A stretch of DNA of 64,000 nucleotides from Schmidtea polychroa (Eukaryota), in contig CM097886.1 in assembly GCA_044892525.1 (NCBI GenBank), positions 135,408,001 through 135,472,000 of the forward strand, written 5' to 3'. The first letter of the stretch is position 1, and each line of letters opens with the position of its first letter. Under the pieces are notes generated by a model. That model was not told the DNA's origin. It searched no databases and was given only the letters and a program-made list of their open reading frames with translations. Position numbers and translations under genes: made by a program. Below, piece after piece: positions 4,601 to 60,362 of this stretch.

Positions 4601-7600
4601 TTGTGTGTCTCGTCACTTTATTTCTTTGACACTTTTCACACATTCTACACCACTCCCTAATTTGTGCTCGCATACAGGGCCACGCATATTTTGACGATAT
4701 CAATTTTATTGTCCCATTTGCTCCTGGGTGGCATAAATTATGAAGCCGCTGGAATTCCCTGAATTGGAATGGTTCTGGCAGTATTATTCGAGGGGAGCCA
4801 GTAGACATATCCACTAGGATTCCGTCATCATCTATACTTATTTTGAATGAGTGATTTGGCTTCAAGGTTTGGGCGAATGATTGTTGTCTTTGTTGATTAA
4901 TTATTTCATTTTTTGTCATCGGCACAGTCTCAACAATATTGAGAGTATTGTTGTCTGAATTAGGTTGTCTTGATAGGAAATCTGCGACAATGTTGTCTTT
5001 CCCTTTGATGTGAATTATCTTTGCATCAAATTCGTTTATGAACTGGATCCATCGCCATTGTCTATTGGATGGGTCTTTCATTGTATTTATATATACCAAT
5101 GGCTTGTGATCGGTTAGTAATTCGAATGTATTGTCGTCCAGGTGATGTTTGAAATTTTTGATGGCTAAATAGGCAGCTAATAGTTCTCAGTCAAATGTTG
5201 AATATCTTTGTTCAGTTTTGTTGAGCTTTCTAGAGAAAAAACTGATTGGTGTAAGTTTACCTTCTGCCGTTCTGTGATTAAGGCTTGCACCAATTCCAAT
5301 GTCCGATGCATCCGTGCATACGATGAATGTGCGTTGCGAATCTGGAGGGATCATTTCAGTGATTTCTTGCAGTTTTTTCTTTGCCGTTTCAAAGGCTTGC
5401 GAGTGTTGATCTTTCCAGATATATTTACGTTTGTCTTTTACTCCGTTTGATGTCAGTTCATGTAACGGAGCCATTATATCCGCCAAATTCGGTATTAGCT
5501 AGTGATAGAATGTTACCATTCCAATAAATCGTCTCAGTGCCTTAGCATCGTCTGGCCTTGAACAGGAGGTGATTGCTTGAATCTTATCGGTAAGATTCCT
5601 GAGTCTGAAATGTGAAATCCAGGAAAGTTAACCTGATTTTTAGCCAAGCAGCTTTTATCTTTATTTATTGATAAATGTGCATCTTTTAGAACTTTTTCGA
5701 TTGTTTGCAAATGTTTTTCATGATCTTCATTCGATTTAGAGAAAATGATTATGTCATCGATGTACGATCTGGAGAACATCCTGTATGGACGTAGAAGTTT
5801 GTCCATGAATCTTTGGAAAGTTTGTGATGCGTTCCTCAGTCCAAAAGGCATTTTGAGGTATTCGTATAGTCCAAAAGGTGTAATTATTGCTGTTTTTGGG
5901 ATGTCGTTTGCTTCAATTGGGATTTGGTGATATGCCTTTTCCAGATCGATCGTTGAAAATATTTTGCTTCCCCCGAGTTAATCTAAGATGTCGCTTATTC
6001 TGGGCAGCGGATATTTGTCGACTTTCGTGACTGAGTTCAGGAGTCTGTAGTCACCGCATGGGCGTATTGATCCATCTTTCTTCTTAACTATTACCAATGG
6101 TGACGCCCAGTCACTCTTACTTTCCCTTAGGATTCCATTTTGATCAAGGTATCGAATTCAGTTTGAACGGCTTCAAGCATGCGTCCACCCAGGCGTCTTA
6201 CTGACTGCGCAATTGGTGGCCCAGTTGTTTCGATTGCCATTGCATGCTCAGAGCTGACTGAATTGCTTCTTTTATTAACATTTGTGATAGCTGTATTTCC
6301 GATGAAGATTTTAGCATTTTTGCAATCCACTAGAAATCTATACTATAATAGAAAGTCTGCCCCAAGAATTGGGCGAGAAACATCTGCAACGATAAATTCC
6401 CATTTGAAATGCTGCTTTTGACCTTCAATCGTAAAATGTAGAACTTTTGAGCCATGTACTTTTATCCTACAGTTGTTAGCCGCTATGAGTCTGATCGGTG
6501 CAATTCTGGAATCGGGTTTAAATATTTTTGTTGGGATAACGCTGACATCTGCCCCAGAATCAATGAGAAAATCATATGATTTATTGTCAGAGAGGACTGG
6601 AACAGTGAAAATTGCATTAATCTTTGTCGACTGTTGAGTTGAGCATTGGATCCCTGTCATCGACATTAACGAGATCCTTGGCCTTTTCCCGACTTAACTG
6701 AATCAGACCAGCAACACGGTTTTTGGCATTTCCTGGCTTTTATTCCGAATCGTCTGTGAAAATAACATATTGTTTCTTCACTCGAATGACGTTCCTTTCG
6801 AGTAGAGCTTTCGTTTGCCCTTATGGCATTGATTTGATCTTGCAGGTTCTCTATTGCAAGCTGATGGAAGTTTCCGGCAATATTTTGACTTCCCACCGGT
6901 GAGATATGCTGATCATTGATGCTTACGTGCAAGTTGGCGATGTTGGCCAACTCATCAATGCCAACGTTGCTCGATATTAGAAGGTATTGAATGTGAACTG
7001 GCATGGAGTTAATGAACTGATGTCTGAGAATTTTGCTCGTTTCTGGGTCACCATTGGGTTCCATTATTTTATTGTTTCTTTTTAATTCTCTAAGGAGTTG
7101 GCTTGGTTTACGATCCCCAAGTTCCTGTTTCTGTAAAAGTTTGTTTGCTGCCTCCGTTGTTGATCTTTTTGAGTCATTAATAATTGCTTCTTTAAGTGCT
7201 GAGTATGGCTGGAGTATATGTGGATCCATTAAATCCGAGTACTCTTCGAGAACGCGAGATGGTAAGCTGGTTAACAAGTGAAAATATTTGGTTTTTCCGT
7301 TTCTGATTGAGGCCAGTTCCAATGCTGCGTCCACTTGTTGAAACCAAACTGCTACATTGTCGAAAAATGTTGGAATTTTCATTTGAATGTGACTACTTTC
7401 TTGAGCCACACTTCTGACACCAATGTTGTCTTCTACATTAATTTGCATTATTATTAATAAGATGGAAGTAAGACGACTTTTTCAAATTCTATTTTTATCA
7501 AATTAATAACATATTAAAACAAAGTTTTTAAATATGTTATTATTAATATAAATATTAATTTAATATTTATATTGATTTAATTGGTTTGACTACAAATATT

Positions 7601-23740: not shown

Positions 23741-25184
23741 TAGGGGCGTGCAAATGTGGCCCGCGAGGCGAATTTTTCTGGCCCGTGGAAATCAAAAAAC
23801 ATACGAATAAATTGAGTTTTATACTTTGATAGCTAAAAGGCTCCGCGATTCTTCTTCTTTTAATTGTTCCTATAAAATTTTCATGAACTCAATTGTAAAC
23901 TCCAAACACAAAATCAACTTATTCACGAACTTTATGGTCACATATTGTCTTTTCAAAGCAAGCTAATTCTGTGGAAAACCCAATTAAAGCAAGGAAATGC
24001 TTATCACTTTCCAACACTTTTAAAGCATTTTGAAAGTGAATTATGTTGTCAGGAATTTGCCAATGAATTGGAAATTTTACATGAAGAATTTATGATCCGA
24101 TTTAATGATTTTCGAATTCATAATATTGGATTTAAAATTTTTTCTTCTCCATTCGATGTTGATGTTTCAACAGCTCCACATCAAATCCAACTGGAACTGA
24201 TAGAGTTACAGGGGAGAATAGAGCTGAGGATGAAAGCAAAAACCATGAAACTCCTTGATTTTTATCAGCAACTTTTTCCAGCAAGCGAATTTTTCAATCT
24301 ATCAAGATTTGTTCAAAAGCGACTGGCTTTGATTGGTAGCACTTACAAGTGTGAGCAGCTATTCTCCAGAATGAAATTCGTTAAATCAGTTCAGAGATCC
24401 AGGATAACTGATCATCATCTTGAAAGTTCCTTGCGATTAGCAATATCCGGGATTTCACCGGACATTAATTCTCTTCAGCGCTCGAAGTGGAACAAAATAT
24501 GTGCCGGGATAGGCATGCTGTGGCACCCGGGATTCCAGGCCTTTATGCAGAAATTTTCAGTTGGGGGTGTTGCAAAACTTTGGGGGGTGTCCAACAAATT
24601 TTTTTGGGGGGGGTGTCCACCCATTTAATCATAAGTTGCTGGTTTAACTAAAATAAATAAGAGAATATACCTACCTATCCATTACTGCTGCTTGGGAAAT
24701 TCTTAATTGAATAGAGAATAGAGAATAAAGAATATATATACATATATGGATGTACTATGTGTGACCTTAATTGCAGTATTTGTGTGCCTATAAAATGAAA
24801 TAAGTACCGGGATAAACCTATAGATTATATGAAATGAAGTGCCGGGATGCAATTCCGCCTACATAATCAATGCCGGGATAATATCCCGGCTATCCCGCCT
24901 CACTTCGAGCACTGATTCTCTTGTGGAGAGTTCAAAGTCACAGAAAGAATAAAATAATTAATCTGTTCATTTTTTTAAATAGTTTAAAGCGGATATTATT
25001 GTACACTATGCTAACTAGCTGCAGTAATTAAGCGTATAGTGTCCTGTTTTTTAGATTAAAAGGTAAACCCTAAGAAAAATTCCGCTGAAAAGAAATTGGG
25101 TTTTTTTTAAAAAATTTTTTCTGGCCCTATAAAAATAATTTTCCTAAAAGTGGCCCTCAGACCACTTTTGGCTGCACACCTCTG
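23741..25184 (+). mobile_element. internally deleted GTF2IRD2/SPIN-type hAT
   Basis: Termini TAGGGGCGTGCA / CAGAGGTGTGCA(rc); transposase C-terminus 23945-24960 (QLELIELQ...GSTYKCEQLFSRMK...RSRITD); TSD not clean. Confidence 0.75.
24476..24914. mobile_element. hAT MITE (439 bp) nested in the transposase remnant
   Basis: TIRs CAG(C/T)GCTCGAAGTG; perfect 8-bp TSD ATTCTCTT; internal CCGGGAT motifs. Confidence 0.9.
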
Positions 25185-30329: not shown

Positions 30330-31984
30330 GGGCAGACCAATTTTGCGGAGGGGCAATATGAACTTGTAGAAGAATACATACAGCTGTTGACAGATACTAA
30401 AGTACAGCGCCACTGTTTCGTTTGAGGAAACAGCATACTGGACCACGAGATGCAGCTGATGGTTAACCCTTTCGCCCCTATTGGGACAATACGTCCCAGA
30501 AACTTTCATCATGATCCTACTGGGATATTTTCAAAGCAGTTTGCGGTGTTATCCCAGGTTATTATCCTAGGACTTTCTAGGATATTCAGAAGCGCCACGA
30601 TTACAAAAATGAGAATATTTCATATTTAGGTCAATATTAACAAGTTCCAATATATAAATTTAGCATAGTGTCATTAGCGGAAAGTCGGTGCGAAAGGGTT
30701 AAAACAGTGAATATAAGGCACTCTGCGATGAAGCCGCTGTTGCAGAAGAGATTGGATTCCACCTTTGTGTCCGGAATTGACACTGGCTCCGTCATAACAC
30801 TGAGCCAATATCCTATCAAGACGAATCTTGTTCTTCTGGAGATGATTGATCAATAAGTGTGTCAAACTCTCTGCATCCAGCTTAGATGTGTCTGCAATAC
30901 ATAACAAACGTTCACGAACTTTTCCCTTGAGATCGACAAATCGTAAAACAATTGAGATATTTTCAATTCCGTTTACATCCTTTGTGCCATCACACATAAT
31001 AGTGAACCAATTGTCATCCAGTTCTGTTACAATTCTTTCTTTAACTAGATCAGCCAAGTGGTGAATAATTTCATTTTGAAATTGGGCTGACGTGTAAGAG
31101 GCATTCCGAGAAATGGTACTATATACACTTGCTAAGTATGGATCCTTCTGCAAAGTGTATTGAAAGAGTTTAACAAATAGACCACATGGCTCAGTTGGCT
31201 CTGAAGTATCATCAACCACACTGCCTAACTTTTGAAGCCCTGCCGAATCTTGAGTACCTCGTAGAGGTAATTCATTCGCTGTTAGGAAGAAAATTATGTC
31301 CATCATTGATCGAACATAGTAGCGGTTCCTCTCGCACTGCTCATCATTCACCTTAGTACTAACTTCCTGTCCCATTAGTTGTCGATGTTGTAAATCTTTT
31401 AAGAGTGCCATGGCGGTTCCATGAGCCTTCGACTTTTCATGCTTTACTAAGCCTCGCTTCCAGTTCCGATAGCCTTTGTGAGTAAAAGCAGCTTCTGATT
31501 CCGCCTGGTGTGTCGATATACATCCAAGATGCGAGAACTTGTAACACGGAAAGCAAAATGCCGCATCTCGGATTTTACTATATTCCAGCCAATCGTGATT
31601 GTTGAACCATGCTGGGTTGAAGCGACGTTCAACTTGACCAAACATTGTTTTAGGGTATGCTGAAGGGAACAATTTTGGCTGCATAGGCTTATCAACTCCG
31701 AGATCTAGAGGTCGTTCTGACTGAGATGACAATGAAACTAGCTGAGATGATAATAGAACTGGTTCAAATGAAGAAGAAATTGGTTGTGAGGATGATGGAT
31801 CGGTATCAGATGATGACAGAATTTCATGAGAGGTGTCATCTGCTGAGTTTATCTGATTACAAATGAGTGTCTTTTCTCCAATACTACTTTTAGGTGTTGT
31901 TGGGATATTGGTGACAGCTGTAGTCATCGGGCTTTTATTCGCACAAGTGGATAACTTTGTGACGAAGAATTTTCGTATGTCCAT
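30330..31984 (-). pseudogene. hAT transposase (TTF zinc finger, DUF4371), interrupted by a MITE and 3'-truncated
   Basis: RRFNPAWF..HDWLEYS..DAAFCFPC; CDGTKD; QCYDGAS; HCFN|HQLHLVV resumes after the MITE. Confidence 0.88.
30467..30698. mobile_element. piggyBac-type MITE (232 bp)
   Basis: TTAA TSD on both sides; TIR CCCTTTCGC(C/A)CC; removing it restores HCFNHQLHLVV. Confidence 0.9.
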
Positions 31985-39899: not shown

Positions 39900-42891
39900 T
39901 AGTTTGATTGTGTTTTTGTGGTTAAATGTGATGTTTTTGTGAATTGGTTGTATTTTCGTTTGTATTTGTGTTTTGTTTTCTGGTGGATTGTTTTGTGGAT
40001 TTTTCGTTCTGTTGATAAGGTTTTAAGCTGCGTATGTTTATTTTGATTTGTTTATTATCTTTTAAGATAGTGCCGACGTTTTTGTACATATTTAATAGTT
40101 TGTATGGGCCTTCGTACTTTTTTTCAAATCCGCTAGTGACGGGTTTCTTTACTAAGACCATATCTATTATTAGTTCTGTTTGGTTTTGTGTTTGTTGAGT
40201 GTTTTTGTTTTTTAGAATGTTTTTTGTTTGGGTATTTGTGATTCTTTATCGATTGTTTTTATCTTGTTTTCGTTTTCATCTTTTAAGTTTAGTAGGTTTG
40301 TATTGTGTCCAAAAATTGATTGACTAGGACTTTTATTGTTTAAGCTTGAAGGATTGTTTCATAATCCTATTAGTATTTCTGGCAATTTTTCAGTTGTTAT
40401 TCTTTTTTGTTCTGATGGATTGTTTTATTGATCGGTGTAATCTCTCCACTTTTCCATTTGATTGTGAGTTGTATGCTGTCGTTCTGATTTTGTTGATGTT
40501 ATATTTGTTTCAAAGTCTTAAAAATGTCGGATTCGAACGGTCTACCCTGATCGCTGATTATTGTCTTTGGACAGCGATACCGTGCGAACCAGTTTAGTTC
40601 TAATTTACTGCATATTTTTGCTGCTGATATTTCCTTTATGGGTATGGCTTCGAACCAATTTGTTTTTCGCTCTATTATAGTTAATAAATACTTGTATGTC
40701 GATATGTATCGTTTCGAACGGTTCAGAACTTGGGAATTCTTCAATTGTTGTTTTGAATTGTTTTGTTGTTATTTTATTCTTTTGACACTGGGCAATTTTT
40801 TACGAACTTTTTTACGTCTTCTCATTTAAGGCCAAACAACTTTGGTATGCAGAAGTTCGTATGTGGCTTTGTTACCCGGATAGTAGATGTTGTGATATTT
40901 CTGGAGGTATTGATCGCGCTGTTCTGCTGGTACTATAATCCTTTTGTTGTTGTTGTTTGAAGTGTCGTACCATATGCCGTCTATTTCTTCCAATTGGAGT
41001 AAATTCAACCTAGGAATTTCGATTATTGTTTCTTTTTGTTTAGTTTTTAAATTTTCTAACTCTGATGAGTGGTATGTTAAGTGCATTGATGTCGGTTTCT
41101 ATTCTTGATAATGCGTCTGCACTTATGTTAGCTGAACCTGCTATGTATTTTATTTTACAATTAAATTGTGAGATATAGTTTAGTTGTCTTATTTGTCTCG
41201 GTGAAGGGTTTTTCATGTTCATTGCGTTTATTAAGGGGAAATGTCTGATTGTATCATGTAGCTCTAATAACTCCCTGTCGAAAGTGAAGTATCTCATTTG
41301 GTGAGTTTTAAGTTTCTTTGAGAAGAAGGCTATTGGTCTTTTTTCATTATTTTCTTCTTGGAATATCGTTCCACCCATTGCTAATCCCGAACAATCTGTG
41401 TTGACTATGTATGGTAATTCTTGGTTGGGCTAGCATAGGATGCTTGCGTTTTCTAGGTTTTCATTTGCCTGTTCGAAAGCTGTTATTAGATTTTCATTCC
41501 AATTTATTTTGATGTTTCTCTTTATTTTGAGTTCGTTGAGAGGGGCTAACATTTCGCTACATTTTGGTATGTATTTGTGATAGAAGTTGATCATGCCAAG
41601 GAAACGTCTTAGCTCTTTTGTAGTTTTGGGTAACGGATAATTTTGATTGCTTTGATTTTGTCGTCTAATGGTTTTGTTCCGTTTTCGTTTAACAGGTGTC
41701 CCAAAAATTTTATTTCTGTTTTCAAAAATTCACATTTTTTTATGTTAATTTTTAGTTCATGTTTGCTTAATATTTCGAACACGTTTTTAATGTTTTGTAT
41801 GTTCTGTTTTGTTTGCTGATGCTATCAAGATGTCGTCTAGGTATGCGACTGTGTTTTGTTGATATCGAAATATTTGGTCCTTGAAGCGTTGGAGTGGCTG
41901 CTGCGTTTTTTATTCCAAAAGGCATTTTGTTATATTCGAAAAGTCCTATGGGTGTGATGATTGCAGTTTTCTTTATGTTTTCCGTTCTAACAGGAATTTG
42001 ATGATAGGCTTTTTCTAAGTCTATTTTGCTGAATATTTTGGGTTTGTTAAATCTGTGTTTCAGTTAAATCAGTGTCGTTTATTATTGGAATTGGGTATTA
42101 GTCGGCTGTTGCGATATTGTTTTATGCTCCGTAGTCTCCACAGGCTCGCCATTCACCGTTTGCCTTTAAGCATGAGAGCTGATGACCAGTTTGAGTTTGA
42201 GTGTTTGACGATTTGGTTTTCTAGTAGTTTGTCGAATATTTTCTTAGTTATTTCGAGTTTATTTTTGTCTAATTGTCTGACTTGCATGAACTGGGTTTCC
42301 GTTGCTAATTATTATGTGTTCGGTTATGCATTTTGTGTTATTGTTTGCCTCTAGTTTATTAGTTATATTTGGTACATTTTGTATCAGTTTTGCGATTTCA
42401 TTAGGAATATGCCAGTTTGTTTCTGTTTTAATTATTTTGTTTCACCGTGTAAGCCTGTTATTACTCCGATGTCACAATTGATTTGTTTCTTGGATTGTTT
42501 ATTTTTGTTGTATATGTTGTTTAAATTGTTTGGTAAGACCTTTCCGTTCTTGTAGTCGACTAGTAGATCGAAGTTTGAAAGGAAATATGCTCCTAAAATG
42601 GCTTGTTTGACTTCAGCGATAGTGAATTGCCAATTGTATTGTGTTGTTGATGGTGATTTTAATGTTTTGTTTCCCGAACGTTTTGATTGGGCTACAGTTT
42701 TCTGCACACAAATTCGCGGTTTCTGTATTTATATTTTTATATAAGTAATTCGGTAACAATGAAGTTATTGAACCTGAATCAACAAGAAAATTAAGGCCAT
42801 TGCTATGCACCGTGAATGTTTGACATTCACCAATTGTCGGTGCTATCATTGGTGAGTTTATATGTTTTCCGACTCTTCTTTGTCGAAGCAA
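39900..42891 (-). pseudogene. pol: decayed gypsy pol (PR, RT, RNase H, IN)
   Basis: FLVDSGS; AYLDDI; RPIAFFSKKL...DRELL; IISDQGRPFES; YEGPYK; many stops and frameshifts. Confidence 0.88.
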
Positions 42892-43310: not shown

Positions 43311-43892
43311 AGCGAGATCTTAAGTGAATGTGTGTAAAGGGCAATAAATAAGGGTAAAATCAAATTTTTTTTAGGAAAATACATGTAATTTGGTTTAAAT
43401 TTATGAAAACTATATATATCTTTTATTTTGGGCTGATAATCTATGTGTGTCTGTATATGAAAACATTGATAAGGAGCCAAAATATCAAATCAAATCTCTT
43501 ATGTTTTACATTTAACTATATTAATCAATAAGAATCATAACTAGTATTAGTATAAATTAAACAGTATATTTAAAATTAATGTACAATGTCAAAATCAAAT
43601 TTTGCAGAAAACATCTTAAAAGGTTTGGTTAATGAGAATATCGCACAAAGCCTCAGTTTCCTGGTTAAGCAAACTGAGAAAATCATTGAGGGAAACCATG
43701 TCGACTACCAGACCATGCTTGATATGTAATGCCTGGAGACGAAGAAATTTTATTTCAATAGGATCTTCGACTGTCTATTCGACGACCAAATGAAGTGAAC
43801 CAGAATAATCATAGGTTTTACCTATATGAAGATTATTATAGAAAGGAGTCTATAAGATGCTGACCATTATAATCTGTGGTCTCAAGAAGTCA

Positions 43893-43971
<79 letters not shown>
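43893..43971 (+). repeat. (ATT)n microsatellite
   Basis: About 26 units. Confidence 0.95.
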
Positions 43972-50740: not shown

Positions 50741-50920
50741 CGTGAATTATGAATAAAATGAAATGGTACAGGGTTTTTATACCTTCAACTTGTGCTTATC
50801 AACCAATCAGATTATTTAAATTGCATTCAAAATGCATAGATGTTGCATTGTGACATGTTCTATTATTAATGTGTCATATTAGTAATGTTTTTATTATTAT
50901 TACTATTCTCAAACTATTTC

Positions 50921-50988
<68 letters not shown>

Positions 50989-51030
50989 TTATCATCATTT
51001 CTATTATTATTTTTATTACTATTACTATTT
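50921..51030 (+). repeat. (ATT)n microsatellite, imperfect
   Basis: Visible. Confidence 0.9.
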
Positions 51031-51501: not shown

Positions 51502-52044
51502 TCAACAGCCAATTAGATATCGAACAATCAGAATGATGCCTTTTAATTGCACTGAATTTGCAATCACATGATATTTTAAATAATTAATTGATAATAAAAA
51601 ATCTAAAAATTCTTTTCCTTCAATTATTGATTTTATTTCAGATATGATGTTATCAACTATACATTTGTAATCAATACTTTTTACGCCAAGAATTAATATC
51701 TTTCCACTAGCAAATATATTATCACACATAGACTTATATTTTATATATATCAAAGCTGGAAATAATTCTGGCTCGTAAACGAATGCTATTAATTTAGCCA
51801 AGTTATTTAAATTACAAGAAAAACCCATGTCAGAAGTTACTGTCATCGATTGTATTTCTAAATCATAAACATTATATTCACTAGCTTTGATTATTTCCTT
51901 ACATTCCATAATTCTAAATTTACCAGTTTTGAAATATATTATTGGATATTTGTTACTTCTATTGATAATTTGTTAGGGTTTTCCATTTGGAAATATCATT
52001 TTTGATACATCAGCCTTTGCACTGTAATTTATATTTGAAAGCAT
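51502..52044 (-). pseudogene. TATA-binding-protein-like gene in the Polinton, one premature stop
   Basis: Repeat 2: EIQSMTVTSDMGFSCNL...YEPELFPALIY...IFASGKILILGVK. Repeat 1: IIYFKTGKFRIM. TAA at 51973-51975 in codon 24. Confidence 0.8.
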
Positions 52045-52139: not shown

Positions 52140-52764
52140 ATGGAATTGAGAAATGATGCAGTATACCAAATCATTGGTCCGAGTGGTAGCGGAAAAACAT
52201 TATTTGTTTGTAAATTACTAAAATCAAATTTGTTCAAAACAAAATTCACCAATATTTATTGGCATAGGGACGCCGACGAAGAACATGGCTTGACACAATC
52301 AAGTTTCTGTCAGTTGAAAAACATGAAAATAGTAAAGGGATTTGATAAAAACTGGTTCAGTCGGTTGAAGAAAGGTGATGTCATCATTATCGATGATTTA
52401 TATCAAGAAGCCAATAAAGAAAAAGATTTTAATAATTTATTCACAAAAATCAGGAGACATGTTGGTGTAACAGTTATTTTCATAACACAATCTATTTCAT
52501 CAAGGTGTGCACATCGAACATGTAATTTAAATGTACAATATTTAGTTATTTAGAGATGCAACTGTCATTGATTTTCTTGGACGACAAGCATACCCTAATA
52601 ATCGTAATTTTCTTATCAATACATTTCAAGATGCTACTAAAATACCGCATGGATATATATTTCTCGATTTCACACAACAATATCCTGATGATATACGGGT
52701 AAAAACAGATATTTTCAACCCAAAGGGTGCCATGGTTTATAAACAAAGTTCAAAACAATGTTGA
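52140..52764 (+). pseudogene. Polinton A32-like DNA-packaging ATPase, frameshifted near 52495-52550
   Basis: Walker A IIGPSGSGKT; Walker B IIIDDL; ITQ; downstream FRD...LGRQ.YP...ATK.PHGY.FLD...R.KTDIF. Confidence 0.85.
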
Positions 52765-52970: not shown

Positions 52971-53669
52971 ATGGCAGAGGAAGCTAATATAAATGCATTT
53001 GCCAGATATCCCGCTCTGCCCGTAAAGGCATTCAGCGGTGATCCGGGAGAATTCCCAGAGTTTATGTCTGAATATTATCAGATTGCCAAAGCATATGCTT
53101 ATCCAGATAATATCATGATACAAAGGCTACCTATATATTTGAAGGGGCTGGCAAGAGAAAAATATAATGACATTATGGCATTACCAGTTGCTCAAGCACC
53201 GAAAACATGGGCCGAAATGAGAGAAGCAATGACTGCTCGAATATTGCCCGGAGATGCGGGAAGAATATTTAGACAACAATTTTATCATCGAAAACAGAAT
53301 GCAAATGAACATGTGGGGGAATTTGCACACCAGCTATCATTAATTGCTGAAAGAGCATTTGGACCAAAAACCACATGGGCAAAGCCAACAGAATTGTTAG
53401 TTAAGGATCAGCTATGGGCAGGACTTACGCCTACAATGAGGAACGCCCTAATATTACATACTAGTGATGATTTTGACGAATTGACACGGAAAGCTGTCGT
53501 AATTGAAAGCAGCTTGGAAAAGTCAACCATGTTCCTTGTAAACAGTGAGAGAACACCGGTAGAGTGTTTCAATTGCCTTAGAAAAGGGCATATAGCGAAA
53601 GATTGTACCAGCAGGAAAATTATGGACAATCGCAAAAGTATACAATGTACCAAATGTGGAAAATTGTAG
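52971..53669 (+). CDS. gag: Gag capsid region + CCHC knuckle
   Basis: FSGDPGEF.EF...Y...A; YLKGLARE.Y; KQNANEHVGEF; CFNCLRKGHIAKDC. Confidence 0.88.
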   Translation: MAEEANINAFARYPALPVKAFSGDPGEFPEFMSEYYQIAKAYAYPDNIMIQRLPIYLKGLAREKYNDIMALPVAQAPKTWAEMREAMTARILPGDAGRIFRQQFYHRKQNANEHVGEFAHQLSLIAERAFGPKTTWAKPTELLVKDQLWAGLTPTMRNALILHTSDDFDELTRKAVVIESSLEKSTMFLVNSERTPVECFNCLRKGHIAKDCTSRKIMDNRKSIQCTKCGKL

Positions 53670-55515
53670 AGTGCAGAATTTGCAATGTGAAAAACGCAAA
53701 CGAAAGGGACACGTTGCTGCAGTCTGTAAGACTAGAAGCTCTCAGAACAGCAATAATTTTAGTACGGTTAAAAGAGATGATGTAAATTCATCAGGAAAGA
53801 TAAAATGTCACGGATGTGGGAAATTCGGACATATGATGAGGTCATGTCCTCAGAATCAGAGTGGGAACACGGGGCAGTTCAATAAAAATACCGATAAGGG
53901 TAATGTGAACAAGCCTAAGACAACTTTTATGGTTAACCAGGATCAAGGATTAACTTACCTGCAACAACTGGAAATGGAAATCCAGGAGGAAAAGAATAGG
54001 TTGGCTAGATTGACCGACCAAGAAGGCACCATCTTCATGGTAGAAGTTGGAAGAGATGAATTTCTCAGAAAAAAGGATTCTGTTAGAGTGGACCTTCAGG
54101 AAACGGAATCAGAGGAGAGTTTCGAGAATGAACCTAGTATGGCCACCATACTAAGCGAGTTTGATGTAACCTTGCCAGGGAAAGCAAAGGTAAAAGAAGG
54201 GTCAGATACCCTAACAAAATGTTTAAAACTGGTGGATTCCAGATATGAGTACCAGCAGAAGCTGGCCAGACAATTGGGAAAATTGGGAGAAACAGAAATT
54301 AAAATTCATGAAATCGATACAGTAGTAAAACTGATATCGCAGGTCGAAGATGATCCAAAGTATCATAACGACACATACAAAATCCTAAGGAAATTAGGAA
54401 AACTTATGGAACATGAGTGGGATCTCCAAGATGCCCAGCTCAATATAAAACTCCCACAGGATAAAGAGTATAATCTCGATATAAATGTAAGAAGTCGAGC
54501 CGATAAATTAACGGAAGCATTGAAAAGTATTAAGCATCAAGGATATGACTTATACTTATGTGGAACAAAACTAGAAGCAAATCAAACACTTCTACAGAAC
54601 GGGATACTCCCAGGTAGAGTGACGAAGCTCACAGCAAAGAGAGCACAAAAGACAGTGGCAGTAATGGATCAAGATAGCGTATTCTTGATTACTCAGATGG
54701 AAATAGAGAGATTGGAGGAAACTCAACAATTAACCCAGCGACTAGGGTTGGAATTGCAGAAATCTCCACGAGATGGAGAAACTATAAAGGAAATACTTGA
54801 CTGGATGTTAGTATTACGAATACCAGTAGATTTGTTGGAAGCAATAATTCCACTTATACTACCAGTAGTAAAGGAAACAAGCCCATTCCAGACGCAAATT
54901 GAAGCGCTGATGAGGAAAAATGGGAAAGCTATCCGAAGTCAGCCTGATAGACAAGGCAACATTAATCTAGACGTGCGAATGATGGGAAAAGAACCATTAA
55001 CAATGATTTATAATTGTTATATCAAAGTCAAAATATTAAGGAGAGATGTGATTGCCAGCGATCAAACTACAGGTATATTCCTGATAATGGTCCATGGTAG
55101 GCAAGTGGATGATGATGAATATCTAGTGGATGTGGGTTGTCTACCGTTGGCAACAACCACGGTAATGATCATCCCAGTAACTCCACCAGAGTCCCAGTGG
55201 TCATTAATGAGACTGCCAGATATAACAAACGAAATTGCGGAAGAAATCGAGGAAATAAGACTAGAGGAAATTAATCACTGTCAAATGGTGGACATTGACG
55301 AGGAAGATTACTTCTCAGAGTACGTCAGATTAAATCCAGGAGAAACAAACGTAGGAGCTACTACGTCACAAGCTATAACAAATCCGGAGACTGAAAAACC
55401 TCCGGAGAAAGTGAAAAAAGATGGACGAGGACGTCCTAGAAAGGATCAAATGAAACCTCCACCCAAGGAGCAGTTAAATCCGGAAACGATTCGGAAAATT
55501 CAGTTAAAACATTAG
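53656..55515 (+). CDS. Gag continuation: two further knuckles, two putative ubiquitin-like domains, AT-hook
   Basis: CEKRKRKGHVAAVC; CHGCGKFGHMMRSC; Ubl-like 54439-54642 and 54961-55176; GRGRPRK 55423-55443. Confidence 0.7.
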   Translation: MENCRVQNLQCEKRKRKGHVAAVCKTRSSQNSNNFSTVKRDDVNSSGKIKCHGCGKFGHMMRSCPQNQSGNTGQFNKNTDKGNVNKPKTTFMVNQDQGLTYLQQLEMEIQEEKNRLARLTDQEGTIFMVEVGRDEFLRKKDSVRVDLQETESEESFENEPSMATILSEFDVTLPGKAKVKEGSDTLTKCLKLVDSRYEYQQKLARQLGKLGETEIKIHEIDTVVKLISQVEDDPKYHNDTYKILRKLGKLMEHEWDLQDAQLNIKLPQDKEYNLDINVRSRADKLTEALKSIKHQGYDLYLCGTKLEANQTLLQNGILPGRVTKLTAKRAQKTVAVMDQDSVFLITQMEIERLEETQQLTQRLGLELQKSPRDGETIKEILDWMLVLRIPVDLLEAIIPLILPVVKETSPFQTQIEALMRKNGKAIRSQPDRQGNINLDVRMMGKEPLTMIYNCYIKVKILRRDVIASDQTTGIFLIMVHGRQVDDDEYLVDVGCLPLATTTVMIIPVTPPESQWSLMRLPDITNEIAEEIEEIRLEEINHCQMVDIDEEDYFSEYVRLNPGETNVGATTSQAITNPETEKPPEKVKKDGRGRPRKDQMKPPPKEQLNPETIRKIQLKH

Positions 55516-55551
55516 CAGGGATAGCCCAAGAAATGGACGACCAGGCGGGAG

Positions 55552-56799
55552 ATGAGACAACGTCAGAAAGGTCGTTATTTGATCGTGATTATCAGGCCCG
55601 AATGGAGAATTCCAAAAATCAAGGGGATCGAAGTAAAGAAAATAACGAAAGAGGTCAAGAAGACAATGGAAAGAATATCCAAAGATGTATCAACTAGAGA
55701 TATACAGGATGCCATAGAAGCATTCGTGCAGCAAGGATTAACAAGAGGGAAAGTGGTAACATCACTATCATTGTTAATTCAAAATGCCTTAGCCCGGGTA
55801 GGGGATGATTAAAGGCTTATAGAACGAGAAATCGATCAAATAGTCGAAATGGTAGATTATTACCTGGAGGTATGGATGACCGTAAACAAATTTTGGGAAA
55901 AGGAAACGATTCCAAAACCACGATATGAGGTAGTGGAAGAAGCTATAAATAATGGTAGTTCAGGCACAGGAATTTACGCAATATTTGTAATTTTAAAGAT
56001 GATAATTACGCAATTGATGTCAACATATAGCATATTCAAAATTGGGGGATGGTCATGGAAACTGCTATTAGGATTATGTCCTATGTGTGCAGAGTTTGCA
56101 TTATTCAAACATCACAGAAAAGAAATTAAAGAAATTAGACAGAAACATTTGGTCAAGCATGAAGTAATTGGAACAGAAATGGAGGAGTATTCTAGTTATC
56201 GGGATGATAACAATTCAAAGGGAGGAGGTAATGGAGGCTCTCGTGAAACATTTTCAAGATCAAATCAATCACGAAAACAGAACTACAACAAAAAACCGAT
56301 TCAGCAACAAAGAAAATCGAGATTTAAGGAATATCTTCCTCCATATGACCAATCAAAGGAAATCTACGTGAGAAAACAGTCCTCAGAAGGAGAATATGAC
56401 AGTTCCGACCAAAAATTCGACATAAGGTCACCCAGATTCAAGAGAAGTCCAAGATATGTACAATTGCCAACTTCGAGGAGTTTACCATCCGCACCAAACG
56501 AGGGGCGGGAACATTCGAGGGAAACAACACTCAGAACAGGACGACCCCAATGGAAAATCGGTGAAGATACCATATTTAATAATTTGACATGCTCAACATT
56601 GCCAGAATTACCTAAAGTGCATTATCCAAAGCAAGCGTTAGAGTCAATTAAAGCTAAATTTAAAGAGTATAATCCTCATCTGAGTGATCCTGAATTACTG
56701 GAAGCAGAACAAACGAGAGCCAATACAATCGGTATCTCGCACGATACTATCTTGATGGTCAATAACCCAGTGAACTTGGATAAAAAGCAAATGATATAA
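55552..56799 (+). pseudogene. polyprotein segment with putative Bcl-2-like domain, hydrophobic helix and basic linker
   Basis: Same frame as the upstream and downstream ORFs; one internal TAA (55810-55812); BH1/BH2-like motifs. Confidence 0.6.
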
Positions 56800-56805
56800 A
56801 TAAGA

Positions 56806-57351
56806 GTGAACCGACATACAGTTAATGCGGTGATAGACTCAGGAGCAGATGGTACCATAATTGAAGCTAAATTGTTAAACCATCATGAACTGCAGTCGCT
56901 AAAACCGGCAGGAGTAAAATTAACAGGAGCAAACGGATCCTCATTAAACGTAATAGGGTCATTATCCTGCCAGATTAAGCTATGTGACCAGGAGCTCCAT
57001 CACGACATCATAGTGATGAGAAGTCTCCCAGCCGAATGTCTATTGGGTATGGACATCCTAAAAAGACTACGAGGAGTAGTATTCGATTGTGCATCTGGAT
57101 TGTTAATCCGAGCACGAGGTAAAAAGAGAAAAATTTACAACGATGATACAGCTTATATAGATCATACAACTATCATACCACCCAGAGCAGAAACGGTATG
57201 CTTTGTAGCTACAAGCAATAATTGGGAAGGTGAAGTTGTATTCGAACCAAACGAAAAATTCTCGGAGAAATACAACATACCAGTTACTCATAGCGTAGGT
57301 TTAATAGTCAATGGCAGAATACCAATCAGGGTAGCCAATCTGGACAATTAA
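56806..57351 (+). CDS. retroviral-type aspartic protease and post-protease spacer
   Basis: NAVIDSGADGTII...LLGMDIL; IIPPRAE...EP...IPIRVAN. Confidence 0.88.
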   Translation: MNRHTVNAVIDSGADGTIIEAKLLNHHELQSLKPAGVKLTGANGSSLNVIGSLSCQIKLCDQELHHDIIVMRSLPAECLLGMDILKRLRGVVFDCASGLLIRARGKKRKIYNDDTAYIDHTTIIPPRAETVCFVATSNNWEGEVVFEPNEKFSEKYNIPVTHSVGLIVNGRIPIRVANLDN

Positions 57352-57367
57352 CCACTTTACTTATATC

Positions 57368-60362
57368 CAGTGGTGATATTCAGCCGGTACGGGGCGGTAC
57401 GCTCGTACCGGTTGTTAACATTTTTAAAATTTTCCGTACCGGTTGTATATTAAAAAAAAAGTATGTTTTTAAGTTAAAGTATGTAAAAGTAAAAGTATTG
57501 ATAAAAACATTCTAAATTACTAAAAAAATATAAAAATTTACCTGCCATTATCGATCAAATACAAAAAATCTTACAATAAAATAAAAATTTGGGATTTAAA
57601 ATTTTTTTCAGTTTTAGTAAAAAAAAATCTACTTAAAACTGTCTAATTTGAATTTTAGTACTTTTAATTTCCACTACAATCCAAGAGATGGCATTGAATT
57701 ATAGAACAAAATTTATGGAATTTAAAAATTCCTACTGAGCATGTGTAAAGTTGCATTTATAGGTGGTTTCACCGCGTAACCACTAAGCTTGAAAGGGTTA
57801 ACGGAAAATTCTGTAAAAAAAAATATTTTTCTTTTAATAAAAAGGGAATTTCCCTTTTTGAATACATTTTTATTTTGATATATTTACTCTAAATAAAAAG
57901 TTTAGTAGTATAAATATTTTTATGGTGAATGGTTATCCCTTACTTTTAATCTCTATTAAATGCAGTTTTAACGTGCAAGTATGAAGATTTTAAATTGATT
58001 TAAATTTCTAATTAATTATTAATTAATTATTAAATATTTTCTTTGTTTCAACCTAAGAATGAAAAGGCAAGGTAATTTGGATGACTTTTTTAGCAAATCT
58101 ATAAAAATAACCAAAAACCCTGAACAGCAAGCTGAGAATATTACTAATTCTAATCAAACAAAACAGGTAAAAGAAAAAAATGATACTTCTGAAGTTCAAC
58201 ACCAATCGGAAAAAGCTGGAACGTCTCGTGATGCTGCGTTATTACATTTTTGGAATGATAAACAACTAAATTATTTTAAAACTAAATACGAGTGGCTTAT
58301 TGTTGTTAGCGATGAAAATGTGGTGTTCGAAAGTAGAATCGTTAAATTTAGAAACTGCTAAACATTTACACATTTCTGTGGAGTGGAAATCATGTTCTGT
58401 CAAAGCTCATGGCTCGAACAAAGAAAATTTACAATCATCAATGAGAAAAAAATTGAAGGAACACAATGAATCAGCTTCACATAAAAAAGCTGGGGAAATA
58501 ATAAAAATTGGTGAAACAAATATAATTTCCAAATCTTTCGATGTGGCTAATGAAAAGTATTTAAACAGCACAGTAAACATTTTTAATACTATCTATTTCA
58601 TAATTAAAAACAATTACCCATTCAGTGATTTTAAAAAATTAATTGATTTACAGAAAAAAAATAATGTAGATTTTGGATTTTCATTACATTCCAGATTTAT
58701 AGTTCCACTTGTCGCAAAGCTTATATCTACAGAAATAAGAAGAATTATTTTTGGAAAACTGATAAATACAGGTTGTAAAATTTCAATTATTATTGATGAA
58801 GCCTCAACTGTTTCACACAAAAGCGTTTTAGTAGTTTATTTGAAATCTGAAATTCAAGATTCCGATGATAGTGTAACAGTTTTTATTGATCTTGTCGAAT
58901 TAGAAGGAACAACATCAGAAATAATTTTTAAAACCTTAATATCAGTTCTTGAAAAACATGGTTTTAATGAAAAATATTTACATGAAAATCTTATTGGATT
59001 TTGCTGAGACGGTGCTAGTGTAATGTTAGGAAAAAAGGCTGGAGTTTCTGCAAGAATTTTAGAACATTTTCCAGGTATTAGCATCTGTCACTGTTTAGCT
59101 CATCGTATTCAGTTAACTCTAGATGATGTTATCAAAGAAGTAAATGAAGTAAATAACTTTAGATATTTTCTCGATAAACTTTATTCGTATTATCATACTT
59201 CAAATAAACATCAACGAGAATTAAATAATGTTTTTAAAGAACTTGGCACTGAAGTACACAAAATAGGTAGAATATTTGGTCCTCGATGGGCAGCCTGTAG
59301 CGCTAGGACCGCCAAAGCAGTTTGGAAATCATATCAGGCCTTATATATTCACTTTAGTCTAAATAAAGAAATTGGAATAATGTCATATTTCAAAAATGAA
59401 AACTTTTTAAAAGATTTAGGTTTAATAAACGACATATTAGAAGAAATTTCTGTACTGTCTACAGCTTTACAAGAAAGAGATATTTCATTAATTAGAGCTG
59501 ATAGATTGATAAGGCGAACGATAAATCTATTCCAACATTTAAAATTAAATAAAGGAACATATGAAAAAGAAGCAGATGATATTATTAAAACGAAAATATA
59601 CAATATTCCATTTGAAATTAATAGAAAAAAAACATCAATTGTTGTTTCGAGAGATACATTTTTTGATTGTTTAGAAAAACATATGAAAACGCGTTTGCTA
59701 TTAGACGATAAAAATGAAAACTATAATAATCTCTTAAATTGCTTTAATTTATTAAATCCAGAAACATGGCGGGGTGATATTTTTGAAGCACCATGGATTG
59801 AAGGTGAAAATAGGTTAGAGCAGTTAAATAAAATAATCAAATACATCATTCCAGTAAATGATTTTCGAGATTTTGTTGATGTGCGAGATAGAGAATCTAA
59901 AAATATTAATACTATTTTGAGAGTAAAAAGAATTTTAAATGTAATTGCTGTTAATTCCGCAGAAGCTGAAAGAGGACTCAGCACAATGAACAATATCATT
60001 TATGATAAGAGAAATTCGTTGTTAATTGAAACAACAAGTCATTTAATGACAATAAATTTAATAGGAAAATCGATTGAGGATTTTGATGCAACACCATATG
60101 TTAAATTATGGTTGCGAGAAGGGCATCATATGGCAAGTGACAAACGTGTCAAAGCAGCCGCACCTAATTTGCCGTCCCAAAACCAAAATTTAATTTGGAA
60201 ATTATTTAATTAATTTTATATACTATTTTTTATATTATTATATATAATATATGTATTTCTTATGTAAATATGTAAATAAATAACTATTATGAAGTAAATA
60301 TAACCTACAATAGATTTTTTTCCATGCGTACCGGTTGTTAAAAAATTCGAATATCACCACTG
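57368..60362 (+). mobile_element. near-full-length hAT (KIAA1586/ZNF862-like), 2995 bp
   Basis: 14-bp perfect TIR CAGTGGTGATATTC; subterminal ACCGGTTGT motifs; right flank is (TA)n, so there is no TSD. Confidence 0.9.
58059..60213 (+). pseudogene. hAT transposase with one frameshift (~58330) and one stop (59005-59007)
   Basis: IIDEAST; GFC*DGASVM; HCLAHRIQL; RW; SAEAERGLSTMN dimerisation domain. Confidence 0.9.

What the first reader, a model, noticed from the sequence alone, without database searches (positions are those of the whole stretch)
54439..55176. Two putative ubiquitin-like domains inside a retrotransposon Gag extension
Seen: LNIKLPQDKEYNLDI...YDLYLCGTKLEANQTLLQNGILPGRVTKL (54439-54642) and INLDVRMMGKEPLTM...LIMVHGRQVDDDEYLVDVGCLP..TTVMII (54961-55176). 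Both follow the ubiquitin pattern (IFVKTLTGKTITLEV...LIFAGKQLEDGRTLSDYNI...LHLV) over ~70 aa. Neither ends in Gly-Gly, so they look like integral Ubl domains rather than cleavable tags. Inference: proteasome, chaperone or SUMO/Ub-pathway interaction modules on a retroelement polyprotein, which is not a standard gypsy feature.
Basis: partly seen in the sequence, partly recalled or inferred. Interest (0 to 1): 0.8.

Follow-up and report, generated by a model that had tools for sequence, protein, structure and literature searches.

The report
Ubiquitin-like domains in retroelement Gag
A dead copy of a virus-like retroelement encodes two built-in ubiquitin-like domains at the tail of its Gag protein; the same module is kept under selection in relatives that also carry an envelope glycoprotein gene, which hints that it takes part in particle release.

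Summary
Both quoted peptides are in the window, in one reading frame, between the Gag zinc knuckles and the aspartic protease of a broken, truncated LTR-retroelement copy. Neither ends in Gly-Gly.

**Segment 2 (54961-55176)** is a ubiquitin-like (beta-grasp) domain.
- The AlphaFold2 model has pLDDT about 90 and the ubiquitin strand-helix order.
- All 50 best Foldseek PDB matches are ubiquitin, ISG15, SUMO, NEDD8 or UBX (TM up to 0.87, rmsd 1.5 Å).
- A four-helix bundle precedes it.

**Segment 1 (54439-54642)** is very probably a second one.
- A profile of it and its counterparts in three relatives hits only ubiquitin-like proteins in the PDB sequences (10 of 10, best E 0.017).
- Its own model is of low confidence.

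The module is a family trait, not an accident of this copy. About 25 relatives from several samples have it. It shows dN/dS of 0.05-0.16. In all seven loci long enough to judge, a Monjiviricetes-type fusion glycoprotein gene follows directly, lying between gag and protease.

Pfam thresholds are not met, and I found no paper describing this.

Function is inferred. I favour a non-cleavable ubiquitin-like handle on Gag for host ubiquitin-binding machinery, most likely ESCRT during budding.

The parts
52971..57369 (+). Broken, truncated copy of an LTR-retroelement coding line: gag, the Ubl module, a glycoprotein remnant and the protease. It has 1 frameshift and 4 in-frame stops. Most of the glycoprotein and all of RT, RNase H and integrase are missing. 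No LTR was found.
   Evidence: Pfam hits; count of stops; tblastn with the pol of relatives ends after the protease; no long direct repeats in 40-64 kb.
53133..53357 (+). Capsid-like part of Gag (Retrotrans_gag, below threshold here).
   Evidence: PF03732 at E 3e-4, 21.4 bits against a cut-off of 24.1. The relative L009 passes with 28.7 bits.
53562..53853 (+). Nucleocapsid zinc knuckles (CCHC).
   Evidence: PF00098 at 9.4e-6, with a second weaker knuckle. The only PDB sequence hits are retroviral nucleocapsids.
54439..54642 (+). Ubl1: probable ubiquitin-like domain with no Gly-Gly end. The predicted part runs 54469-54642.
54739..54951 (+). Four-helix bundle directly before Ubl2, modelled with it as one compact unit.
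   Evidence: AF2 helices at residues 2-8, 14-26, 31-45 and 52-68 of the 160-residue model; pLDDT 71-89 over these helices; pTM 0.79. Conserved in relatives.
54958..55179 (+). Ubl2: ubiquitin-like beta-grasp domain with no Gly-Gly end. An acidic loop (55108-55119) is conserved across the family.
55945..56148 (+). Remnant of the membrane-anchor end of a Monjiviricetes-type fusion glycoprotein.
   Evidence: PF24664 at 5.2e-5, profile positions 548-612 of 653. 42% identity to P0015 residues 1457-1492. A hydrophobic stretch lies here.
56806..57096 (+). Retropepsin-type aspartic protease.
   Evidence: gag-asp_proteas 2.2e-12, RVP 5e-6. Similar to the protease repeats of P0015.

Best explanation
**What it is (shown or predicted).** The stretch encodes the C-terminal module of the Gag protein of a retrovirus-like LTR element. 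The order is Ubl1, a four-helix bundle, then Ubl2. It lies after the capsid and zinc-knuckle parts and before the protease. Both Ubls are integral type-2 ubiquitin-like beta-grasp domains. They have no Gly-Gly end, so they can be neither conjugated nor clipped off by deubiquitinases. The window copy is dead. The module itself is a conserved, selected feature of a diverged family in which a viral fusion glycoprotein gene lies between gag and protease.

**How it most likely works (inferred).** The Ubl stays attached to Gag and gives every assembling Gag a permanent ubiquitin-like handle. Host ubiquitin-binding proteins could bind that handle. The most likely partners are the ESCRT entry factors that cut enveloped particles off the membrane. 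On this reading the module plays the role that short late-domain motifs, or ubiquitin attached to Gag, play in retroviruses.

**My confidence.** Ubl2 is a Ubl: about 0.9. Ubl1 is a Ubl: about 0.8. The module is a functional family trait: about 0.9. The ESCRT or late-domain mechanism: about 0.35, which is the figure given below.
For: **Fold.**
- AF2 model with pLDDT 88 and the ubiquitin secondary-structure order.
- The Foldseek PDB top 50 are all ubiquitin-like, TM up to 0.87.
- The BFVD viral library returns almost only named ubiquitin and Ubl proteins.
- Both profiles hit almost only Ubls in the PDB sequences.
- Linear tetra-ubiquitin aligns over 256-265 columns of the 292-residue model, so it reaches into both domains.

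**Family trait under selection.**
- 26 library hits, most of them covering Ubl2.
- Nine further metagenome loci.
- dN/dS of the module is 0.15, 0.16 and 0.05, against 0.09-0.21 for the rest of gag.
- A second Ubl lies 178-180 residues upstream in a distant clade, the same spacing as in the window.

**Position and company.**
- The module sits at the Gag C-terminus after the zinc knuckles, where retroviral late domains sit (established knowledge).
- In 7 of 7 loci long enough to judge, a PF24664 glycoprotein gene follows directly. The window keeps its membrane-anchor remnant.
- None of 11 family Gag proteins has PTAP/PSAP, PPxY or YPxL.

**Precedent.** Ubiquitin fused to the C-terminus of foamy-virus or EIAV Gag drives ESCRT-dependent budding. 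This needs L8 and I44 but not K48 or K63 (PMC2958808).

**Surface.** The positions I align with ubiquitin I44 and V70 are hydrophobic in 71% and 77% of 13-14 sequences.
Against: - No binding or release data exist; the mechanism is inference only.
- The loop equivalent to ubiquitin L8 is not conserved as hydrophobic (0-31%).
- Identity to ubiquitin is only 9-21%.
- The helical bundle may cover the I44-like face. I had no coordinates to check this.
- The most conserved feature is an acidic loop (86-100% acidic) that ubiquitin lacks. That points to a partner of its own.
- Missing late-domain motifs are weak evidence: only about three chance matches were expected.
- Pfam gathering thresholds are not met by any member.
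- The Ubl1 model is of low confidence.
Confidence: 0.35

Rival explanations
1. The beta-grasp domains are assembly or scaffold modules with no link to ubiquitin pathways. They would bind another part of the element itself, such as the cytoplasmic tail of the neighbouring glycoprotein, the nucleocapsid or the RNA. This is how the integral Ubl1 of coronavirus nsp3 is reported to bind the N protein and RNA (my knowledge, not tested here).
For: - The best conserved feature is a family-specific acidic loop plus a Gly-Cys pair, not the ubiquitin recognition patch.
- The L8-equivalent loop is not conserved.
- The Ubl is fused to a helical bundle in one compact unit (pTM 0.79).
- The module is strictly adjacent to the glycoprotein gene.
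- The beta-grasp fold serves many unrelated functions (established knowledge).
Against: - Nearly all the nearest sequence and structure matches are true ubiquitin-family members (ISG15, ubiquilin, NEDD8, SUMO, UBX), not the other beta-grasp groups.
- The I44- and V70-like positions stay mostly hydrophobic.
Confidence: 0.3
2. The Ubl works as in Ddi1/Ddi2, Rad23 or ubiquilin. It would dock the polyprotein, or its retropepsin domains, on the proteasome or on shuttle factors. That would tune the turnover of Gag and Gag-Pol, or help the protease reach its substrates.
For: - A Ubl and retropepsin-type protease(s) lie on one coding line.
- The protease also matches the Ddi1-type Pfam family: PF09668 at 8e-7 in the window and 2.8e-14 in P0015.
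- A helical domain lies next to the Ubl, as in Ddi1.
- Ubiquilin UBLs are among the best sequence matches.
Against: - The domain order differs: helices come before the Ubl, and 300-1000 residues including a glycoprotein separate the Ubl from the protease.
- The protease scores far better with the retroelement families than with the Ddi1 family.
- No UBA domain was found. The only hint is UBA_3 at E 0.054.
- Targeting one's own Gag for degradation has no obvious benefit.
Confidence: 0.2
3. Only segment 2 is a real ubiquitin-like domain. Segment 1 merely resembles the C-terminal half of one and folds differently.
For: - AF2 confidence is 46-74 over segment 1, and its first strand is missing.
- Pfam gives only Rad60-SLD at E 0.14.
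- The single-sequence PDB search mixes Ubl hits with CCT and FtsY hits.
- Four distant relatives show only one Ubl with my profiles.
Against: - The four-sequence profile of segment 1 hits 10 of 10 ubiquitin-like PDB sequences.
- A library-wide E of 7e-6 to a protein of Ubl-type repeats.
- hhalign to segment 2 aligns 94 columns in register, P 2.5e-4.
- The same upstream domain at the same spacing occurs in a distant clade.
- Tetra-ubiquitin aligns across both domains.
Confidence: 0.2
4. The Ubl-like stretches are chance similarity, or a host gene fragment picked up by this one dead copy, and have no function.
For: The window copy is broken and truncated. No Pfam family passes its threshold.
Against: - The module is present in about 25 relatives from at least five sources, some with long open frames.
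- dN/dS is 0.05-0.16.
- The fold model is confident.
Confidence: 0.03

Closest known systems
Integral (type-2) ubiquitin-like domains and two-Ubl proteins: UBLs of ubiquilin/PLIC-2 and BAG6, plus ISG15 and FAT10
   Same: The beta-grasp fold. These are the best sequence and structure matches. As in ISG15 and FAT10, there are two Ubl domains in one chain.
   Different: - Identity is only 9-21%.
- No Gly-Gly end, unlike ISG15 and FAT10.
- A family-specific acidic loop and a preceding four-helix bundle.
- The domains sit inside a retroelement Gag.
- Pfam thresholds are not met.
Ddi1/Ddi2 (UBL, helical domain, retropepsin-like protease)
   Same: A non-cleavable Ubl, a helical domain and a retropepsin-type protease lie on one coding line. 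The protease passes the Ddi1-type Pfam cut-off (29.6 against 26 bits).
   Different: - The order and spacing differ.
- The protease fits retroelement families better.
- The Ubl does not match the Ddi1 UBL by sequence.
- It is part of a mobile element that also has gag and a glycoprotein.
Laboratory Gag-ubiquitin fusions (foamy virus, EIAV, RSV Gag; PMC2958808)
   Same: A ubiquitin fold fixed to the C-terminal end of Gag. There it replaces late-domain motifs and brings in ESCRT.
   Different: Those are engineered and use true ubiquitin. Here the fusion is natural and old, the domain is a distant Ubl, and no function has been tested.
Ubiquitin or Ubl sequences in other viruses: ubiquitin inserts in pestivirus (BVDV) polyproteins, baculovirus v-ubi, giant-virus ubiquitins, coronavirus nsp3 Ubl1/Ubl2
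   Same: A ubiquitin fold encoded by a virus, in some cases inside a polyprotein. BVDV, baculovirus and giant-virus proteins are the BFVD structural hits.
   Different: BVDV inserts and v-ubi are near-identical copies of host ubiquitin with a cleavable end (my knowledge).
[quoted passage not shown]
   Same: LTR retroelements that carry a viral fusion glycoprotein. The relatives here have a Ty3/gypsy-type pol domain set.
   Different: - The eLife survey describes F-type and gB-type env and does not mention ubiquitin.
- Here the glycoprotein matches the Monjiviricetes family PF24664.
- It lies between gag and protease.
- It is preceded by the Ubl module.

Membership tests
Ubiquitin-like beta-grasp superfamily (fold level) | b-b-a-b-b-(3_10)-b order of secondary structure | tested here: met
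   Ubl2: strands at 75-82, 88-93, 114-119, 122-123 and 140-148; helix 98-109; 3_10 at 130-133; pLDDT 89-97. Ubl1: all elements except the first strand, at low confidence.
Ubiquitin-like beta-grasp superfamily (fold level) | Structural superposition on solved ubiquitin-like proteins | tested here: met
   Ubl2: the Foldseek top 50 are all Ubl folds, TMt up to 0.87, rmsd 1.5-2 Å over 75-80 columns. Ubl1: only indirect, through tetra-ubiquitin aligned over 256-265 columns.
Pfam ubiquitin family (PF00240) and related Ubl families | Score above the curated gathering cut-off | tested here: not met
   Window segments: Rad60-SLD at E 0.14 for Ubl1, nothing for Ubl2. Of 14 family members, 2 hit PF00240 at best 0.0034, about 17 bits against a cut-off of 25.4. 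No hits in further relatives.
Conjugatable ubiquitin-like modifiers (ubiquitin, SUMO, NEDD8, ISG15) | C-terminal Gly-Gly (or Gly) exposed after the last strand | tested here: not met
   Neither segment is followed by Gly-Gly; the chain runs on. The same holds for the aligned relatives.
Ubiquitin recognition surface (L8-I44-V70 patch) | Hydrophobic residues kept at the three patch positions | tested here: inconclusive
   My alignment to ubiquitin gives 71% hydrophobic at the I44 equivalent, 77% at the V70 equivalent and 0-31% in the L8 loop. Solvent exposure could not be checked.
LTR retroelement of Ty3/gypsy (Metaviridae) type | Gag with a capsid-like domain and CCHC knuckles, followed by a retropepsin | tested here: met
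   Retrotrans_gag (below threshold), zf-CCHC at 9.4e-6 and gag-asp_proteas at 2.2e-12, in this order on one strand.
LTR retroelement of Ty3/gypsy (Metaviridae) type | RT, RNase H and integrase in that order | tested here: not met
   Absent from the window copy on the + strand. Present in relatives L001 and L004: RVT_1, RT_RNaseH(_2), Integrase_H2C2, rve. No RT phylogeny was made.
LTR retroelement of Ty3/gypsy (Metaviridae) type | Flanking long terminal repeats | tested here: not met
   No long direct repeats in 40-64 kb of the window, nor within contigs L001, L003 and L004. Those contigs may be too short.
Ddi1/Ddi2 | N-terminal UBL, then a helical domain, then a single retropepsin-like domain, in a host gene | tested here: not met
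   The order here is helices, Ubl, long spacer or glycoprotein, then protease(s). It sits in a gag-bearing element.
Envelope-carrying retroelements (errantivirus-like) | A viral fusion glycoprotein gene within the element | tested here: inconclusive
   The window has only a membrane-anchor remnant. Relatives have full PF24664 matches up to 1.7e-87, placed between gag and protease.

The most novel reading that the evidence does not exclude
This would be an undescribed lineage of enveloped, retrovirus-like elements of invertebrates. It encodes its fusion glycoprotein between gag and protease. Instead of short late-domain motifs it carries a hard-wired, non-removable ubiquitin-like handle on Gag: a duplicated helix-plus-Ubl unit. 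That would be a natural counterpart of the laboratory Gag-ubiquitin fusions that recruit ESCRT.
Probability: 0.25. Interest if true: 0.8.

Novelty: new variant of a known kind. Interest (0 to 1): 0.62.

Why it matters
The role of ubiquitin in the release of retroviruses has been debated for over twenty years. Much of the evidence comes from artificial Gag-ubiquitin fusions.

A natural, conserved and selected Gag-Ubl fusion, found in a family that also carries an envelope gene, would give a comparative handle on that question. One could ask which surfaces evolution keeps when the ubiquitin fold is permanently part of Gag.

It also adds an accessory domain to the known repertoire of LTR-retroelement polyproteins. 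And it points to a family with an unusual gene order, glycoprotein between gag and protease, that current domain libraries do not flag.

Tried and rejected
**Searches that found nothing for the Ubls**
- Pfam on the whole reading frame and on the bare segments: nothing significant.
- Single-sequence PDB search: only zinc knuckles.
- BLAST of segment 1 against segment 2: nothing. Only profile comparison shows the link.

**Searches that failed for technical reasons**
- Word-indexed protein search restricted to segment 1: no hit at all, apparently from word sampling.
- Profile of alignment A4 against PDB: useless, because the segment 1 columns were dropped.
- Profile A6: swamped by the zinc knuckles of two full-length rows. 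It was replaced by A7.
Alignment A5 worked.

**Negative results**
- No relative in viral contigs.
- No exact gene record for the window's own reading frame.
- No paper found for the assembly that holds P0018.
- No LTRs found.

**Ideas considered and dropped**
- The conserved acidic stretch as an LC3- or SUMO-interaction motif. It lies inside the fold and does not fit either motif.
- A deubiquitinase-cleavable tag, as in pestivirus ubiquitin inserts. There is no Gly-Gly.

- My script printed the bounds of stop-free stretches.
- That amounts to giving the places of breaks.
- I also reasoned about frame changes while planning.
- This report gives counts and column shares only.
Full report
**Observation**

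Translating 54439-55176 on the + strand gives the quoted peptides in one open stretch. Neither proposed domain is followed by Gly-Gly.

The window is AT-rich (27-44% GC per 2 kb) and full of transposon remains.

The finding lies on a + strand coding line with this order:
- a capsid-like Gag part (Retrotrans_gag, just under threshold);
- CCHC zinc knuckles;
- the stretch in question;
- a short match to the membrane-anchor end of a viral fusion glycoprotein (PF24664);
- a retropepsin-type protease (gag-asp_proteas, 2.2e-12).

The line is broken by one frameshift and four in-frame stops. It ends after the protease. No RT, RNase H or integrase follows on this strand, and no LTR was found. So this is a dead, truncated copy.

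**Segment 2 (54961-55176)**

Sequence alone says little. Pfam finds nothing and the PDB sequence search finds only zinc knuckles.

An exhaustive HMMER search of 1.84 billion representative proteins gave 26 hits. Most of them cover the part that holds segment 2 and the helices before it. Two of those relatives have weak PF00240 matches at exactly the aligned place.

A profile of 14 sequences (A1) hit 17 PDB sequences. Fifteen are ISG15 or ubiquilin Ubl domains, covered end to end, with a best E of 0.007.

AlphaFold2 on that alignment gave mean pLDDT 88 and pTM 0.79. The model is a four-helix bundle followed by b-b-a-b-b-3_10-b.

Foldseek against the PDB returned ubiquitin, ISG15, NEDD8, SUMO, FAT10, UBX and BAG6 domains in all 50 top places. 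TM reached 0.87 and rmsd was 1.5-2 Å over about 78 columns. Foldseek against predicted viral structures returned almost only named ubiquitin and Ubl proteins of giant viruses and baculoviruses, plus ubiquitin inserts of pestivirus polyproteins. No named hit was a retroelement protein.

Column shares fit a ubiquitin core:
- alternating hydrophobic positions in strand 1;
- an amphipathic helix;
- a fully hydrophobic strand 3;
- a glycine at the turn, in 69% of sequences.

One feature is family-specific. The four codons at 55108-55119 are acidic in 86-100% of 14 sequences. They are followed by an aromatic (93% identical), a leucine (100%), a glycine (92%) and a cysteine (85%).

**Segment 1 (54439-54642)**

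The evidence is weaker but consistent.
- Alone it gives Rad60-SLD at E 0.14. It also gives an in-register, full-length match to the ubiquilin-2 Ubl at E 0.33, among unrelated hits.
- The library search linked it (E 7e-6) to P0018, a 1232-residue protein. P0018 has one clear ubiquitin domain (PF00240, 6e-26) that seeds eight more internal repeats. A profile of those repeats finds segment 1.
- Close relatives (P0001, P0002, P0008) share segment 1.
- A distant clade (L007, L008, L009) has a matching domain 178-180 residues upstream of its segment-2-type Ubl. That is the same spacing as in the window.
- A profile made only of segment 1 and its counterparts in L006, L007 and L009 (A7) hit ten PDB sequences. 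Nine are named ubiquitin-like or ubiquitin-derived: five ISG15 sequences, SB132, an IQ-and-ubiquitin-like protein, the ubiquilin-2 (hPLIC-2) Ubl and a ubiquitin design. The tenth and best hit (E 0.017) is 2daf, named only 'FLJ35834 protein', which I recall as a Ubl domain from memory.
- hhalign of the unit 'helix plus segment 1' against 'helices plus segment 2' aligned 94 columns, ending at the ends of both segments (P 2.5e-4). This suggests an internal duplication.
- The 292-residue AF2 model is poor over segment 1 (pLDDT 46-74) and lacks the first strand. Even so, linear tetra-ubiquitin aligns to it over 256-265 columns.

I take segment 1 as a second Ubl with about 0.8 confidence.

**A family trait under selection**

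Relatives come from several sources:
- three UniParc entries;
- an ENA assembly (ERZ25039515), with three long loci;
- a second ENA assembly and a Logan assembly;
- two JGI metagenomes.

Nei-Gojobori dN/dS was computed for the helix-plus-Ubl part, on copies as they stand. The result was 0.15 and 0.16 between two subfamilies, where dS is about 1.3 and near saturation. It was 0.05 within one subfamily, where dS is 0.57. The rest of gag gave 0.09-0.21.

**Company the module keeps**

In every locus long enough to judge, a gene matching PF24664 follows the Gag-Ubl reading frame directly and precedes the protease. PF24664 is the fusion glycoprotein family of Monjiviricetes. The loci are L001, L003, L004, L005, L007, L008 and L009, from three samples.

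In L001, Gag, the Ubl, the glycoprotein and four protease-like repeats form one open frame of 2296 codons. RT, RNase H and integrase of the Ty3/gypsy domain type come next.

The window keeps about 36 residues of the membrane-anchor region. They are 42% identical to L001's product and lie at the corresponding place.

**Mechanism**

Shown or predicted:
- integral Ubl domains that cannot be conjugated or removed at a Gly-Gly;
- a location at the Gag C-terminus;
- purifying selection;
- constant linkage with an envelope-type gene.

Inferred: the Ubl serves as a permanent ubiquitin-like handle for host ubiquitin-binding factors, most plausibly ESCRT entry factors during budding. Three points favour this.
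- The position equals that of retroviral late domains (established knowledge).
- None of 11 family Gag proteins has a PTAP, PPxY or YPxL motif. This is weak evidence.
- Ubiquitin fused to the Gag C-terminus replaces late domains, in an ESCRT-dependent way that needs L8 and I44 but not K48 or K63 (PMC2958808).

Three points count against it.
- The L8-like loop is not conserved.
- The helical bundle may cover the I44-like face.
- The strongest conservation lies in an acidic loop that ubiquitin lacks.

The rivals are therefore live. One is a scaffold or adaptor role inside the particle. The other is a Ddi1- or shuttle-factor-like link to the proteasome.

**Comparison and novelty**

At fold level both domains belong to the ubiquitin-like beta-grasp group. 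They fail the Pfam thresholds, and they lack the Gly-Gly that defines conjugatable modifiers. They are therefore type-2 integral Ubls.

They are not Ddi1 relatives by architecture.

Three literature searches found no report of a Ubl in a retrotransposon Gag. The recent survey of envelope-carrying Ty3/gypsy elements describes F-type and gB-type envelopes and does not mention ubiquitin. [quoted passage not shown]

I rate this a new variant of a known kind.

**Limits**
- The host species is unknown to me.
- No RT phylogeny was made.
- No model coordinates were available for surface analysis.

- and notebook entry 1 give reading-frame bounds inside the broken line.
- I noticed this late, deleted nothing, and give only counts and column shares here.

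Noticed in passing
window 55945-56148 (+); L001 1544-8434; L003 7961-12709; L004 9023-11269; L005 3178-4266; L007 2514-3956; L008 1949-3127; L009 3139-5504: A fusion glycoprotein of the Monjiviricetes Pfam family (PF24664, up to 1.7e-87) is encoded between gag and protease in this family. In L001 it shares one open frame with both. The window keeps only the membrane-anchor remnant. I know of no description of this gene order in envelope-carrying LTR elements.
   Followed up: partly
L001 (P0015 residues about 1557-2200); L003 12777-14609; L004 13210-14964: Relatives carry two to four tandem retropepsin-like domains after the glycoprotein. They also carry an ankyrin-repeat reading frame between the proteases and RT.
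   Followed up: partly
window 52140-52553 (+), perhaps on to about 52760: A fragment of a poxvirus A32-like packaging ATPase (Pox_A32 2e-6, RNA_helicase 1.4e-6), as in Polinton/Maverick elements. It ends about 200-400 bases before the gag start, which leaves little or no room for a 5' LTR.
   Followed up: no
window 58059-60213 (+); also 30674-31981 (-) and 23945-24625 (+): hAT/ZMYM-type transposase remains (Dimer_Tnp_hAT, DUF4371). One lies directly after the truncated retroelement and may mark where it was cut.
   Followed up: no
window 51502-51906 (-): A short reading frame with a clear TATA-binding-protein domain match (PF00352, 5e-12). It sits among transposon remains and may be a gene fragment or pseudogene.
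   Followed up: no
window 3798-7445 (-) and 40502-42054 (-): Other LTR-element remains on the opposite strand. They include an integrase (Integrase_H2C2, rve), a DUF7041 protein, and RT/integrase similarity to the pol of L001 and L004 (E to 1e-100).
   Followed up: partly
L002 1601-5299 (P0018), assembly GCA_004196315.1: A 1232-residue protein made of about nine ubiquitin-type repeats lies right after a gyrB gene on a bacterial-looking contig of 36% GC. It may be a ubiquitin-mimicking protein of a host-associated bacterium.
   Followed up: partly
window 43890-43970 and 50919-51000: Long ATT microsatellites.
   Followed up: no
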